NCBI GenBank assembly: GCA_033442325.1
Contig: JAWQFM010000027.1
Coordinates: 1 to 27,027 of the forward strand
DNA: 27,027 nt
Direction of reading: 5' to 3'
Source: Salpingoeca rosetta
Lineage: Eukaryota > Protista > Choanoflagellata
Positions 1-6,867 of the stretch are shown here, in pieces. The first letter of the stretch is position 1. Each line of letters starts with the position of its first letter. Below the pieces are notes generated by a model that saw only the letters and a program-made list of their open reading frames with translations, did no database searches and was not told the DNA's origin. A program made the position numbers and the translations under genes.

Positions 1-24
1 GTGTGTGTGTGTGTGTGTGCGTGC

Positions 25-97
<73 letters not shown>

Positions 98-180
98 ATG
101 GCTGCTGCGTGGATGCTGACCTCAAGCCCTCACTGAACATTCATGGCTGACACTCTGTGCCGCTTTGTTTCTCTGTGTAG

Positions 181-1647
181 TACTACGCGCATCTTTCCCA
201 GCAGCAGAACATGATGGGGGTACGAACTCCAATCCATTCTGTCTCGCGTGTGTGTGTGTGTGTGTGTGTGTGTTTGCAAGTGTGTGTGTGTGTGTGTGTT
301 GTATGTGAGTGCCTGAAAGCGTGTCTCTTGACAATGCCCACCATGCATAACGTGTGTTGGCGAACTCACTCTGCACAGGACTTTGTAAGGACGTCCACAT
401 ATCGGGACGCCATGCTCAAGAACCACGCCGACTTCAAGGACAAGGTGCACTGGAACTCCACTGCGTGTGCAGTGCGACATGCCATCCCACAGGCCTTTGG
501 TTCACACCGAAAACACACACACACACACATACACATTTGCACACACACGCACACACACGCGCGCGCACCTCCTCACATCACGCGCGTGGTGTGCAGGTTG
601 TGCTTGATGTGGGCGCCGGCAGCGGTCTGCTGTCGTTCTTCGCAGCACAGGCGGGAGCACGCAAGGTGCGCTGGTGGTGAAGACGGCCGGAGTTGATGAT
701 GCGTCATTCGTGACGGTAACGTTTGGTGTGCGAGTGGTATCTGTGCAGCGTGTGCCTCAGCCAACACACCCACTGCCTCTGTCACATTCATCTGCTCCAT
801 ACATCCTCCTGCACTTCGAACGCACTGATTCACTCGCCACTCCCCCCCCCTCCCTCGATTGCAGGTGTATGCGGTGGAAGGGAGCCACATGGCGGAGTGT
901 GCGCGCGCGCTCGTCAAGGGGAACAACCTCGAACACGTCATCACCGTCCTGCAGTGCAAAGTCGAAGACGTACGTCCACCTGGTGCCATCGTGGAGATGT
1001 GTGTGTGTGTGTGTGCGTGCGTATGCATGTGTGTGTGTGTGTGCGTGCGTATGCATGTGTGTGCATGTGTGAGTGTGCGTGCGTGCGTATACATGTGTGT
1101 GCATGTGTGTGAGTGTGTGTGTCGGAGTGTGTGTGTCGGAAACGTGTAGGATGCGTTTACTTTCGTACTGCAAGCGCCCCCCCCCGTCCTTATTCCTCTC
1201 TTCACGTTCCTGCCCCACCCATTCCCAATCCCTTGTCCCTCCCTGTCCTTCTCGTCCATCCCCCTCCCCCGAAACAGGCGGACCTGCCGGAGCCTGTGGA
1301 TGTCATCATCTCTGAACCCCTGGGAATCATGCTCGTCAACGAGCGCATGCTCGAGAGCTACGTTCACGCCCGCAAGTGGTGCGTACGTGTGATTGTGTGT
1401 GTGTGTGTGTGATTATGTGTGCGTGAGTGGGTGAGTGGGTGAGTGAGTGGGTGTGTGTTTCAATGTGCAATCATGATGTATGACAGCCTTGCATCAGCCA
1501 CGAGTCTGACACGTTATGTCTGACGCATCTGCGTGTGCGTATGTGTGCGCATGTAGGCTGAAACCCGGCGGCAAGATGTTCCCGACCAACTCCACGCTGT
1601 TCATCTGCCCGTTTTCCGACGCCAACGTCTTCCTCGAGGTGCAATGT

Positions 1648-1683
<36 letters not shown>

Positions 1684-3035
1684 CACACGCACACACGTAC
1701 GTTCACGACAACCACATCACATCCCTTCCCGCGTGCTCATCACCACCATCTCACCACCACCACCACCTCCACTTGCATGCGAGCAGACGCAGCAGAAGGC
1801 GCAGTTTTGGCAGACGAAGCAGTTCCACGGGATTGACCTGACGCCGCTGCACGCCGCCGCCCTCGACGAGTACCTCAGCCAGCCGTGCGTCGAGCAGGTG
1901 AGCAACACACATGAGGTGGAGTGCTGGTGGAGCAGTTGCGTTGGGTTGGCGGGACGAGGGAGGCGGTGGAAGGCGGAGAAGAGAATAGTAATTACGCGGA
2001 GGGTGAGCGAGTGTCAGTGGTGAAGGAGAAGACATCATCATCAATTCGCTCTCTCGCTCACACACACACACACACCATACAAACGCACGCACCATACCAT
2101 ACAAACGCACGTGTTCCCTGGTGCTGTAGATCAACCCGGAGTGTCTGGTTGGAGCGCCCGTGTACCGCAAGTTCGACTACCTCACCATGGACGCAAAGGA
2201 CTTTTTCGAGGTGACGGCAATGCTCTCATCGTCCCATGATGACAGTGGTAGTGGTGATGGTTGATAGAATTAGTGGCGATGGTGATGGTCCATGCTTCAT
2301 AGAAGGGATTGTGATTGTCTGGTTACGCTGCAATTGGTTGCTCGCAACAGCTGTTCTCGTTTGCGCGTGAATGATACTGACGGGTTTGTACCACCATCAT
2401 CATTGTTGCTGTGCTATTGTTGCAGATCACCATGGAGTTCTCGTACACGTTCCCGCACCCGGTTGAGGTGGGTCGTGATGGCCGTGCCATGATGACGGCT
2501 GTCTCGTATTTGTTTCGCCTTTCGCTGCGCGCGTGTGTTTCGCTCACTGCTTGCCATGTAACTCTCAAACTCAAACGCAAAAACTACACAAAAGCGCATA
2601 CTCACACACTCACACATACACACCCACACGCTCACGCTCACTCACACTCACACTCACTCACACTCACACTCACTCACACTCACACTCACTCACACTCACA
2701 CTCACTCACACTCACACTCCCACTCACACTCACTCACACTCACACTCACACTCACACTCACACACACACACAGATCCACGGGCTTGCGTCGTGGTTTGAC
2801 AACATGTTTGAGGGCACTTCGTTCCAGGTGCCGCTGTCCACGTCTCCGTATGCGCCCCTCACCCACTGGTACCAGGTGCGCTGCCTGTTGCGGGAGAGCG
2901 TGCTTGTGCAGCCGGGCGACACGCTGCGCGGGAAGCTCGCCATGCGCACCAACCGCTTCCAGAGCTACGACGTGCACATTGCCGTGCAGACCTCCACCCA
3001 GCAGTCCGAGGGGCACATCAACCTCAAGGGTGCGT

Positions 3036-3117
<82 letters not shown>

Positions 3118-3488
3118 TTGCACTTGTGCGAACGTGTGGTACTTTTTCGTTGTTGATATTGCGTGCCTTGCTCTTGTCATTCATCCCAGCACTCTTTCGA
3201 AACACCCTCACCCGTCTCGTTCTCCTCATTCTCGCCATCGTTTCCCTTTCCCTTTATCCAACACACACACGCATGCACACACACGTACACACGCGCACAC
3301 GCATACACCATACACATACGCATTTACACACGCACACAGAGCCCAACTTCCGCTTCGGGCAGTTCTCCAGCGTCCCGCACGCGTTCCCCGTCGGCGACGA
3401 TGTGCACGAGCAGCAGGCAGACCAGCACCAGCAGCAGGCGATCAAGGAAGGAGAGGATAGCAGCAAGGCCATGGTCACTGGAGAGTGA
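181..3488 (+). CDS. CARM1: CARM1/PRMT4-like type I protein arginine methyltransferase, 5'-partial, 11 exons
   Basis: GT-AG exons 181-219, 379-444, 597-665, 865-969, 1278-1378, 1557-1638, 1787-1897, 2130-2210, 2426-2467, 2774-3029, 3340-3488 splice in frame (1101 nt including TGA). Product reads [63 protein letters not shown]...[22 protein letters not shown] (double-E loop)...[10 protein letters not shown] (THW loop). SQQQNMM and QSYD are typical of CARM1. Confidence 0.95.
2600..2773. repeat. (CACACT/CACT)n intronic simple repeat running up to a splice acceptor
   Basis: Tandem ctcaca/ctca units ending in cacacacag at 2773. Confidence 0.9.
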
Positions 3489-3867
3489 GATGGGTGGTGT
3501 GATGTCATGTCATGTCGTGTGAATTGCGTTTTGGCAATTGGCATGGGTAATCAACCGTAGCCAGGCAGTTTAGGGCCAGCCAGCTTCGGCGTTGCTTGCA
3601 CTTACAGTAGTTGCGTGTATGGTGTGCATGTGTACGTGTGTGTGTATGTGTGTGTGTGTGTATGTGACACACAATACAAGGTCGTCACATCAGAGCGTGG
3701 TCGCCACAACCAACGAGAACAGCTCCTCCGCCCAACAGCACAAAGTGTAGTAACTGAAGTGTTTTGGTTTCTGTTCGAGAGAGCGGACGGACGGAAACAC
3801 ACACAAACACACTTTCAAACAAGAAGACGCAAGCGACACACACACCAACACACACACCTTGGGCGTG

Positions 3868-4975
3868 ATGCCTCGACGGCGTGAGGATGTGCCGTTGCGA
3901 GGAAAGAAGTCTGGGAGTGGGGAGGGCGGTGTACCTGCGATTCGCAGTCGAGGCAGAGCTGCGACGACATCTGTAGCGGCTACCCTAGCGCAGGCATCCC
4001 CATCCACCTTGAGAAAGGCTGAGAGGTCATCGTCCATGTCCAAGGTGAAGATGACGGGGACATCAACCGGCCCCATATCGGGCTTCATCTGCCCCGCATG
4101 CCCCAACTTGATTAACTTTGAGTCTGAGACACTGTTGCTTCGCCACTGGGAAGCCTGTCATGAACAAGAAGTCTCCAGCATATCCGTACAAGACAACACA
4201 GACACGGTATTGTGTACGCATTGTGCTGTGTGTTGTGTGTGTGTGTGTGTGAGTGCGTGTACGTGTGCTCTGTGTGTGTGTGTGTGTGTTGTGCGTTCGC
4301 TGTACTCTGTGCGCTGTGCGCTCTATGCGTGCCGGTGTATTGTCTTCGCTTCAGCATGTGCTGCGTGTGTTTGATGATGGCGATGATGCTCTTAAATTTT
4401 TTGCGTCAGGCGTGGCGAGAGCACCTGTTCACGGACACCTGCCGCGCTGGCAAGACGTGTCGGTTCTGTGGTCATCGCATTTGGCGCGACGGACTGCAAT
4501 GCAAGAGTGCGTTACACTCTTGTTGTGTGTGCGTGTGTGCGCGCATGCGCTGGATGAGGTCATGCCACAGGTGTTCGTGGTGCCCTGCTGCCGGTGTGCG
4601 CCAACTTACATGTCTTGCATATTTCTGCGCACGCGACACGACCTGCCTTCCAGCCTGTCGCTATGCCTGCCACATCAAATGTGTCACCAAGGTGAGGTGC
4701 CTCGTGCTACGTTTGCGCTATGCATCCACCACCTCGTATTTCCACTTGCCGTAATCATGCATGAGCACGGTGTCGAGGCAGGGAGCACTCATACTGCTCA
4801 TAGGCTGCTTGCCTGGCCGTTCAGCGTTTGGCACGTCCCCTCACTCTGCGTCCTCGCATGCCTGCATGCACACCTGCTTTGTTTGTTTTACGCGCAGGCC
4901 AAGCCCGTGTCCAACTGTCCTGGCTTCTACCAGTCCACCAACCCAATTGTCAAGGGCATTCGCAAAGTCGTCACC

Positions 4976-5067
<92 letters not shown>

Positions 5068-5536
5068 CGCACTGACGGCTTGCTTGCTGATGAGTTGCTT
5101 GCTTGCTGGTGGCTTGCTTGCGTGCTCACTGGTTCGCGCGTTCGCAATGGGGGATGGCAGACGAGAACGGTAGCGAGGTGTTGACAGGGCCAATTGAACA
5201 GTGCGTGCAGGACTCGCAGGAGCTCAACGCCATCAACGCAATGATGAATGCACAGCCACTGCACATTCGCTTTGCCAACAAGAAGCGTGAGTGAGTGTGT
5301 GTGTGTGTGAGTGTGTGTGTGTGTGTGTGGAAGTATCAGGCTGTACATGTGTGCGCTGCGCGCAGGCTTTGCGTCCCGCTCACATGTGTCATGCACGTGT
5401 TGGTGGTGCAGATGCTTCGCTGTTCCTTGCCGCGTGCCCATCCTCCGCATCGCCTTTGTCATCAGAGCCGGCTGGCGAAGACGGAAAGAAGTTTGAGAAG
5501 ACGCGTGACTCCGCCGCCATCAGCGAATACTTCAAG
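3868..5536 (+). CDS. 3'-partial gene: C2H2 zinc finger + C1 (Cys/His-rich, DAG/PE-type) domain; probably the N-terminal part of a CARM1-like gene
   Basis: ATG at 3868. Exons 3868-4206, 4410-4506, 4654-4691, 4898-4977, about 5174-5286 (acceptor chosen on phase) and 5466-5536 are in frame. GFICPACPNLINFESETLLLRHWEACH is a C2H2 finger. HLFTDTCRAGKTCRFCGHRIWRDGLQCKTCRYACHIKCVTKAKPVSNC has C1 ligand spacing. The last exon ends FEKTRDSAAISEYFK before a GT-repeat intron that runs into the gap. Confidence 0.8.
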
Positions 5537-5638
5537 GTGTGCACGTGCGCGCGCGCGTGTGTGTGTGTATGCGTGTGTGTGTGTGTGCGTGTGTGTGTGC
5601 GTGTGCGTGCGTGTGTGTGTGTGTGTGTGCGTGTGTGT

Positions 5639-5699
<61 letters not shown>

Positions 5700-5759
5700 C
5701 GTGTGTGTGTGTGTGTGTGTGTGCGCGTGTGTGTGTGTGTGTGCGTGTGCGTGTGTGTG

Positions 5760-5792
<33 letters not shown>
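5537..5792. repeat. Long interrupted (GT)n intronic microsatellite; other large tracts at about 1-91, 3040-3113, 4978-5066, 7806-7920, 22261-22380
   Basis: Directly visible dinucleotide tracts. Confidence 0.95.
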
Positions 5793-5892
5793 NNNNNNNN
5801 NNNNNNNNNNNNNNNNNNNNNNNNNNNNNNNNNNNNNNNNNNNNNNNNNNNNNNNNNNNNNNNNNNNNNNNNNNNNNNNNNNNNNNNNNNNN
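5793..5892. other. Assembly gap (100 N)
   Basis: N run flanked by (GT)n on the left and (GAT/GAC)n on the right. Confidence 0.99.
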
Positions 5893-5893
5893 T

Positions 5894-6867
5894 GACGACG
5901 ACGATGACGACGATGAAGATGACGATGAAGATGACGATGAGATGACGATGAAGATGACGATGACTCCGCGTTGACGACCCCCTGGCACAAGCGTGGCTTT
6001 GAATGGCATCATCGTGCGTGGCGGCTGGATGCCGCATTTGATGCGCAGCTCCAGTGGAGGCATCCCAACAGCGACGTCTGCACCGCACGACTGCCTCGCC
6101 TCACTGCTCTGTATCGGTGGATTGAAGAGCAGATGGTGCCAGGCATCTCCTTGTCGCGTGTGGAGATTACGAAATCAGCAAGTGTGCTTCAAGGGTTTAA
6201 CTCGCGCGTGCATCGCTCCGCTCGGCGCCGTGGCGATCCCACAGCCGCCCAGCATAACCCGGACTATGGAGCCAACGACCCGGAGAAGCGAGCCATGCTC
6301 GGTCGCTTGAAGTCGCAGTTTGCTCTCACCGCTGACGGCGTCAAGCACGTGAATGTTCTCCTCGGGTGGCACGGATGCGATGAAGCGGTCACAGACAGCG
6401 TGATAGCTTATGGTGCCATCAACTTGAGCAGCCCAAAAGATCGCGGGTACTTTGGCTCCGGCATCTACCTCACCCCGCAAGCTGGCTACGCTGCTGGGTA
6501 TTCCACCGGCCTGCTCAAAACTCAGTGGCGCCCACCAAACGCTAACGGCGAACACGTGCTACTGCTGTGCGCTGCCCATGCGGGCCTTGCGTACCCAATC
6601 ACCCGCAGCAAGGACTACACGGGCAAGGTGCCCAAGCAGCATCCACATGGGCCCGAATTGTGCGACTACTACGGGCAGCCGTTCGACGCATTCCACGACA
6701 CCCACTATGTGCAGGTGTCCCAAGCTACCGATTTCCAGGCCACGCCAAGGCCCGGCCGGTACGACTTTGAGGAGTACGTGCTCTCTCAGGAGATGCAGTG
6801 CCTGCCATTCGCAAAGGTGTTTGTCAAGGTTGACAGGGATGCACTGGACACGTACTTGTTTGGATAA
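5894..6867 (+). CDS. 5'-partial gene ending in a PARP-like (ARTD, H-Y-E) ADP-ribosyltransferase catalytic domain, preceded by a poly-Asp/Glu tract
   Basis: Open frame 5941-6867 contains LLGWHGC, D-R-GYFGSGIYLTPQAGYAAGY and YDFEEYV, matching the PARP HG, GxGIYF..YS and catalytic-Glu motifs. The D/E repeat upstream is out of frame by one missing A at about 5940. Confidence 0.8.

What the first reader, a model, noticed from the sequence alone, without database searches (positions are those of the whole stretch)
181..5792. CARM1 exons appear circularly permuted: the missing upstream exon lies downstream of the stop codon
Seen: exon 5466-5536 ends KKFEKTRDSAAISEYFK in phase 0 before a (GT)n intron. 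The window opens with a similar GC-interrupted (GT)n tract followed by the phase-0 exon [12 protein letters not shown] at 181. Known (recalled): animal CARM1 reads [27 protein letters not shown], and joining the two exons restores this YFxxY helix. Inference: 3868-5536 is the 5' half of a CARM1 gene. The locus is then either a head-to-tail tandem duplication with a unit of roughly 5.7 kb (collapsed or cut by the gap), or a mis-ordered contig. Genuine exon scrambling or a circular unit is least likely.
Basis: partly seen in the sequence, partly recalled or inferred. Interest (0 to 1): 0.75.

Follow-up and report, generated by a model that had tools for sequence, protein, structure and literature searches.

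The report
CARM1 gene rotated in orphan contig
The only CARM1 (arginine methyltransferase) gene of the choanoflagellate Salpingoeca rosetta is stored back half first in a small orphan contig that breaks inside a long (GT)n intron, which is almost certainly a draft-assembly artefact and has left the public gene models truncated.

Summary
Window 181-3488 holds 11 exons of a CARM1 catalytic core that starts in phase 0 at [12 protein letters not shown]. Window 3868-5536 holds 6 exons with a start codon and no stop, ending in phase 0 at ...SAAISEYFK.

Complete transcript ORFs from the choanoflagellates Microstomoeca roanoka and Hartaetosiga gracilis read ...EYFK|[12 protein letters not shown] without a break. 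Their matches to the window end exactly at 5536 and resume exactly at 181. So 3868-5536 is the 5' half of the same gene.

Window 1-5792 is identical to GL833036.1, a stand-alone 5,792-bp scaffold of the 2013 S. rosetta draft. Both of its ends lie in (GT)n. The 100-N gap after it looks like a later Hi-C scaffolding join, not a sized gap. Nothing lies upstream, because the window starts at base 1 of its scaffold. Both halves are single copy in the assembly.

The contig is therefore a rotated image of one locus. The likeliest cause is head-to-tail copies collapsed into one unit (about 0.5). The next is a false join in the 380-bp spacer (about 0.3). Real scrambling is unlikely (about 0.05). Only reads can decide between these.

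This is ordinary biology. Its use is for curation, since PTSG_11441 is truncated and mis-spliced.

The parts
1..92 (+). GC-interrupted (GT)n tract; 3' portion of the microsatellite in the split intron; left end of the contig and of the scaffold
93..180 (+). Unique 3' end of the split intron, with AG acceptor at 179-180
181..219 (+). Exon B1, phase 0, [13 protein letters not shown] (second half of the pre-core YFxxY helix)
379..444 (+). Exon B2 ([22 protein letters not shown])
597..665 (+). Exon B3, SAM-binding motif I ([10 protein letters not shown]...)
865..969 (+). Exon B4
1278..1378 (+). Exon B5, double-E loop region ([16 protein letters not shown])
1557..1638 (+). Exon B6
1787..1897 (+). 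Exon B7
2130..2210 (+). Exon B8; skipped in the public model PTSG_11441
2426..2467 (+). Exon B9; skipped in the public model PTSG_11441
2774..3029 (+). Exon B10, PRMT beta-barrel with THW loop; best PDB matches are CARM1
3340..3488 (+). Exon B11 with TGA stop at 3486-3488
3489..3867 (+). 379-base spacer joining the 3' flank of half B to the 5' flank of half A. Unique in the assembly. It contains an imperfect GT-rich tract at about 3615-3667, which is the only candidate site for a false join.
3868..4206 (+). Exon A1 with the start codon; low-complexity N-terminus and a C2H2-like CxxC...H...H motif
4410..4506 (+). Exon A2, first part of a C1-like zinc finger
4654..4691 (+). Exon A3, middle of the C1-like finger
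4898..4979 (+). Exon A4, end of the C1-like finger plus linker; the donor lies in a (GT)n run, so its exact position is ambiguous
5161..5286 (+). Exon A5; only weak similarity to the N-terminal domain of the Barroeca monosierra orthologue
5412..5536 (+). Exon A6 (the public model starts it at 5466); CARM1 pre-core segment ending ...SAAISEYFK in phase 0
5537..5792 (+). GT donor and 256 bases of GC-interrupted (GT)n; 5' portion of the split intron; right end of the contig
5793..5892 (.). 100-N spacer joining GL833036.1 to the next draft scaffold (a scaffolding join)

Best explanation
S. rosetta has one functional CARM1/PRMT4 gene. Its mRNA runs A1-A6 (3868-5536) and then B1-B11 (181-3488). The intron between A6 and B1 carries a (GT)n microsatellite of at least about 350 bases that the 2013 454/Sanger assembly could not cross. 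The 5,792-bp contig is a rotated picture of this locus. In it, the 3' flank of half B runs without a break into the 5' flank of half A, and both contig ends sit in the same microsatellite. That pattern is a cycle in the assembly graph. The likeliest cause is two or more near-identical head-to-tail copies (whole or partial) collapsed into one unit and cut open at the weakest point. Being a repeat, the contig could not be placed and stayed an orphan scaffold. Hi-C later attached it to the end of a chromosome-scale scaffold. Shown here: the two halves belong to one gene, and the contig is an orphan bounded by (GT)n. Inferred: the copy number and the collapse.
For: Half B is CARM1. Exon B10 hits PDB CARM1 chains at E = 1e-19 against 2e-8 for PRMT1, and matches PRMT_C above the curated cut-off. 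Half A has a start codon, six in-phase exons and no stop. Complete transcript ORFs of M. roanoka (P0151) and H. gracilis (P0003) read ...EYFK followed directly by [12 protein letters not shown]. tblastn matches for four choanoflagellate orthologues (P0151, P0003, P0152, P0154) end exactly at 5536 and resume at 181, except the mis-framed P0152 model, which resumes at B2. BLASTP of exon A6 gives E = 1e-7 and 2e-5. No other genomic place matches the orthologues' first 110-140 residues, and there is only one CARM1-type locus. Window 1-5792 equals the stand-alone scaffold GL833036.1. Both halves and the spacer are single copy in the assembly. The spacer is mostly unique sequence, which argues that the B-to-A junction exists in real DNA. 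The assembly history comes from PMC4054682 and PMC10232365.
Against: No read depth, mate-pair or long-read data were available, so the copy number is untested. With exactly two copies, an assembler would be expected to break at the duplication borders and keep links to the true flanks, yet no such flanks are seen. The consensus has no ambiguous bases. A 379-base stop-to-ATG spacer leaves little room for a 3' UTR plus a promoter.
Confidence: 0.5

Rival explanations
1. The gene is single copy and the contig is chimeric. The true order is flank - A - (GT)n - B - flank. The assembler, or the manual gap closing, falsely joined the 3' flank of B to the 5' flank of A through GT-rich low-complexity sequence at about 3615-3667, and conflicting mate links left the contig an orphan.
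For: GT/CA microsatellites are extremely common in this genome, giving hundreds of hits, and occur in most introns of this gene. The spacer contains a GT-rich tract of about 53 bases. The draft was built by a hybrid Newbler and Arachne process with manual edits. A single-copy gene is the default expectation.
Against: The tract is short and imperfect; its longest pure GT run is under 20 bases, so 400-800-base reads should span it. A join of exactly the two halves of one gene needs a special coincidence or guidance from mate pairs. No other scaffold carries any overlapping flank sequence.
Confidence: 0.32
2. The permuted order is real. Either the unit is a circular or amplified extrachromosomal element, or it is a single chromosomal B-then-A arrangement whose two pre-mRNAs are joined by trans-splicing.
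For: Both halves keep intact reading frames and canonical splice sites. The contig closes on itself only through (GT)n. Nothing in the sequence alone excludes this reading.
Against: The two intron halves are same-sense GT repeats. They do not have the Watson-Crick complementarity seen where split genes are trans-spliced (direct reading). The gene model of the relative Barroeca monosierra runs from the EYFK exon into the B1-type exon in normal order. The contig is an orphan from a draft assembly, which is the typical setting for artefacts.
Confidence: 0.05
3. A and B are separate genes. A continues into some other exon beyond the (GT)n tract, for example the acidic, PARP-like ORF after the gap, and B's own 5' exons are simply missing from the assembly.
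For: In the rescaffolded record, A's open donor faces a + strand ORF that lacks a start (5941-6867).
Against: That adjacency comes from a later scaffolding join with arbitrary orientation. Exon A6 is homologous to the CARM1 pre-core segment and ends on exactly the right residue and phase. No other pre-core exon exists in the genome.
Confidence: 0.03

Closest known systems
CARM1/PRMT4 of animals and choanoflagellates (for example PDB 3b3f or 5dwq; M. roanoka EP00043_P013338; H. gracilis EP00056_P012569)
   Same: The type I PRMT core has motif I, the double-E loop, the THW loop and the PRMT_C barrel. It also has the CARM1-type pre-core YFxxY...QQQNMM helix and the C-terminal LKEPNFRF segment. 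Exon B10 is 71% identical to M. roanoka, and the other core exons are 50-81% identical.
   Different: In the record the gene is stored 3' half first. The N-terminus appears to carry a C2H2-like and a C1-like zinc finger that the other choanoflagellate orthologues lack. No PF11531 N-terminal domain is detectable.
Collapsed tandem repeats or rotated contigs in draft assemblies
   Same: A small orphan contig whose two ends lie in the same repeat and whose content is a circular permutation of a linear unit.
   Different: Excess read depth, the usual proof, could not be measured here.
Genuinely split or permuted genes joined at RNA level
   Same: The 3' part is encoded ahead of the 5' part.
   Different: There are no complementary intron halves. 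The break coincides with a contig end in a microsatellite. The gene model of a related species is colinear across this junction.

Membership tests
CARM1/PRMT4 (type I protein arginine methyltransferase) | SAM-binding motif I (VLDVGxGxG) in a Rossmann fold | tested here: met
   Exon B3 reads [23 protein letters not shown]. It gives weak PrmA and Methyltransf hits because the piece is only 23 aa. It is 96% identical to the orthologues.
CARM1/PRMT4 (type I protein arginine methyltransferase) | Double-E loop and THW loop | tested here: met
   [16 protein letters not shown] is in exon B5 and LTHWYQVRC is in exon B10.
CARM1/PRMT4 (type I protein arginine methyltransferase) | PRMT C-terminal beta-barrel and dimerisation subdomain | tested here: met
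   PF22528 at E = 1.5e-11 and 45 bits, against a cut-off of 27.
CARM1/PRMT4 (type I protein arginine methyltransferase) | Closer to CARM1 than to other PRMT paralogues | tested here: met
   PDB CARM1 at E = 1e-19 against PRMT1 at 2e-8 and PRMT6 at 1e-7. The top full-length database relatives are annotated CARM1/CARMER.
CARM1/PRMT4 (type I protein arginine methyltransferase) | Continuous pre-core helix ...[15 protein letters not shown] | tested here: met
   Met only when exon A6 (ending at 5536) is read before exon B1 (starting at 181). The orthologues are colinear across that join. In the record as written the helix is split and permuted.
CARM1/PRMT4 (type I protein arginine methyltransferase) | N-terminal PH-like CARM1 domain (PF11531) | tested here: inconclusive
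   No PF11531 match anywhere in the genome, but the control genomes were silent too. There were no Pfam hits for the A exons. The choanoflagellate orthologues also carry no PF11531 hit. Exon A5 resembles the B. monosierra N-terminal domain only weakly: E = 0.012 without composition correction, and not significant with it.
Collapsed tandem duplication | Read depth about twofold or more, and reads spanning the copy junction | not testable with these tools
Trans-spliced split gene | Complementary sequences in the two intron halves and separate primary transcripts | tested here: not met
   Both halves are same-sense (GT)n. Transcripts could not be examined.

The most novel reading that the evidence does not exclude
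The B-before-A order is real in the chromosome or on a circular element, and S. rosetta makes its only CARM1 mRNA by joining two separately transcribed halves across (GU)n-rich intron halves.
Probability: 0.04. Interest if true: 0.8.

Novelty: not a real feature. Interest (0 to 1): 0.15.

Why it matters
S. rosetta is the main experimental choanoflagellate, and CARM1 is a conserved chromatin and transcription co-activator. Because of this rotated contig, the public proteome holds a truncated and mis-spliced 355-aa PTSG_11441 plus a separate stop-less 251-aa protein. It does not hold one CARM1 of roughly 620-635 aa. Comparative studies would therefore miss the N-terminal part, including a possible lineage-specific zinc-finger extension. 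Otherwise this is an ordinary assembly problem, useful as a curation flag for the 2013 draft and its Hi-C rescaffold.

Tried and rejected
- A PDB search with the 23-aa exon alone found nothing at E up to 10; the query is too short.
- Pfam scans of the A exons one by one found no families.
- I built a broad HMM of the pre-core segment from 135 CARM1-like proteins. It ranked the A6 fragment first among 5,225 six-frame fragments, but at only 8.6 bits, which is not significant at genome scale. I therefore rely on the close orthologues instead.
- PF11531 searched against the genome gave no hit, but the controls were silent, so this is uninformative.
- A suffix-prefix test of the two contig ends found only a trivial 18-base (GT)n overlap. 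The same overlap appears with any other GT tract, so it is no proof of closure.
- Exon A5 against P0152 with composition correction was not significant.
- An exact look-up of the A1-containing ORF in other assemblies found nothing on record.
- Paper and supplement searches for the PTSG identifiers found nothing.
- The reading that A continues into the PARP-like ORF was rejected, because that adjacency is a later scaffolding join.
- The joined (spliced) protein was never submitted to any search tool. All searches were exon by exon, by reference. Joined translations were printed only inside my own scripts to check frames.
Full report
**What the record is.** The window is bases 1-27027 of scaffold C27 of a 55.4-Mb, 68-sequence assembly, so nothing lies upstream of it.

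A word search with a choanoflagellate orthologue returned 'hypothetical protein PTSG_11441 [Salpingoeca rosetta]', 355 aa, on a contig of 5,792 bases. The look-up of that protein gave record GL833036.1 of GCA_000188695.1. This is a stand-alone 5,792-bp scaffold with two gene calls: 211-3488 (355 aa) and 3868-5536 (251 aa, weak C1_1 hit). The record is letter-for-letter identical to window 1-5792.

The 2013 draft had 154 scaffolds. It was built from 454 fragment reads, 454 jumping reads of about 3 kb, and Sanger 4-, 10- and 40-kb clones, using Newbler, then Arachne HybridAssemble, then manual edits (PMC4054682). In 2023 it was rescaffolded to 36 chromosomes with Hi-C, using HiRise and SALSA2 with manual curation (PMC10232365).

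In the present assembly, sequences C1-C36 are large and the later ones are small. Native gaps have varied sizes, whereas C24, C26, C27 and C28 each begin with a 6-8-kb piece followed by exactly 100 N. I therefore read the gap at 5793-5892 as a Hi-C join of an orphan scaffold to a chromosome end. It is not a sized gap inside a locus. This last step is an inference.

**Gene anatomy.** On the + strand I modelled 11 exons at 181-3488 ('B', 366 codons plus stop). I modelled 6 exons at 3868-5536 ('A', 251 codons, or 269 with an earlier acceptor at 5412). All have AG/GT borders and compatible phases.

- B begins in phase 0 with [13 protein letters not shown] and has no start codon of its own.
- A has an ATG that is the first one after an in-frame stop. 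It has no stop codon and ends in phase 0 at ...SAAISEYFK, directly before a GT donor.
- My A model coincides in span and length with the public call, which was made independently.

**B is CARM1.** Exon B10 matches PRMT_C above the curated cut-off. It matches PDB CARM1 chains at E = 1e-19, against 2e-8 for PRMT1. Motif I, the double-E loop and the THW loop are all present in the translation. The genome has only three PRMT_C loci, and only this one is of CARM1 type.

**A is the 5' half of the same gene.** The all-database HMMER search with exon B10 and the word search produced choanoflagellate orthologues. Their sources are as follows:

- Hartaetosiga gracilis, P0003, a complete transcript ORF.
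- Microstomoeca roanoka, P0151, a complete transcript ORF.
- Barroeca monosierra, P0152, a genome-based gene model.
- Salpingoeca macrocollata, P0154.

In P0003 and P0151 the mRNA reads ...EYFK followed immediately by [12 protein letters not shown]. A local tblastn of these proteins against the window gives matches that end exactly at base 5536 and resume at base 181, then run on colinearly to 3395; P0152, whose model is mis-framed at this junction, resumes at B2. BLASTP of exon A6 gives E = 1e-7 against P0151 (18 of 38 identical, ending on residue 131 = K of EYFK) and E = 2e-5 against P0003.

Whole-genome searches with P0003 and P0151 found no other place matching their first 110-140 residues. 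The B. monosierra model also runs from its EYFK exon into the B1-type exon, although read in the wrong frame. So the order there is the normal one.

The joined spliced protein was not handed to any search tool. Everything was done exon by exon, by reference.

**The break.** The complete introns of this gene are 125-310 bases long. The split intron already totals at least 436 bases, of which about 350 are GC-interrupted (GT)n. The two contig ends are the same repeat type and orientation, but they overlap only trivially. This tract is the obvious place for a 454/Sanger assembly to fail.

**Why the halves are in the wrong order.** In the contig, B's stop is followed by 379 bases of mostly unique sequence and then A's ATG. 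A linear single-copy gene cannot give that picture unless the spacer is a false join. A cycle in the assembly graph gives it naturally.

- I favour collapse of two or more near-identical head-to-tail copies (about 0.5). The junction lies in unique sequence, and repeats typically end up as orphan scaffolds.
- The main rival is a false join at the imperfect GT-rich tract at about 3615-3667 (about 0.3).
- True permutation, a circular element or trans-splicing is possible but unsupported (about 0.05). The intron halves are same-sense repeats, not complementary.
- A continuing into the acidic, PARP-like ORF after the gap is rejected (about 0.03). That adjacency is a scaffolding join, and exon A6 is clearly a CARM1 pre-core exon.

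Read depth, junction reads, long reads and RNA-seq junctions would settle this. None was available here.

**Verdict.** Taken together, the two artefact readings have a probability of about 0.8-0.85. Biologically this is an ordinary CARM1 orthologue. The practical outcome is a curation flag, because the public models are wrong. PTSG_11441 starts at an internal Met, skips exons B8 and B9, and reads through intron sequence. The 5' half is annotated as a separate stop-less protein.

Noticed in passing
window 3868-4979 (exons A1-A4): The 5' part of the S. rosetta CARM1 gene appears to encode a C2H2-like CxxC...H...H motif and a C1-like zinc finger (precomputed Pfam C1_1, weak). These are absent from the M. 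roanoka, H. gracilis and B. monosierra orthologues. Exon A4 carries both the last Cys of the finger and the linker into A5. So this is either a lineage-specific domain fusion or a merged upstream gene.
   Followed up: partly
window 1898-2773: The public model PTSG_11441 (P0158) replaces exons B8 and B9 (2130-2210 and 2426-2467, both well conserved in orthologues) with about 40 residues of intron-derived low-complexity sequence. It also starts at an internal Met at base 211.
   Followed up: yes
window 5893-6867: The next draft scaffold begins inside an acidic GAY-repeat coding tract that leads into an intronless ORF, which another first-stage note calls PARP-like. There is an apparent one-base frame shift near 5938-5941, and the ORF has no start codon in the assembly.
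   Followed up: partly
G000 C24:1-6804, C26:1-6061, C28:1-7949 (loci L030, L025, L026): Several chromosome-scale sequences begin with a 6-8-kb piece followed by exactly 100 N, as C27 does. Small orphan scaffolds seem to have been attached to chromosome ends, so genes at such ends may be misplaced or mis-oriented.
   Followed up: partly
window 1-5792, introns: Most introns of this gene carry (GT)n or (AC)n microsatellites, up to 88 bases within the contig, and hundreds of similar tracts occur genome-wide. GT tracts often start right at the donor, which makes splice-donor positions ambiguous (for example at the end of exon A4).
   Followed up: partly
protein P0152 (Barroeca monosierra gene7008), residues 116-136: The B. 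monosierra CARM1 gene model reads the exon homologous to B1 in the wrong frame, directly after its EYFK exon. The same intron therefore also trips gene prediction in a relative.
   Followed up: partly
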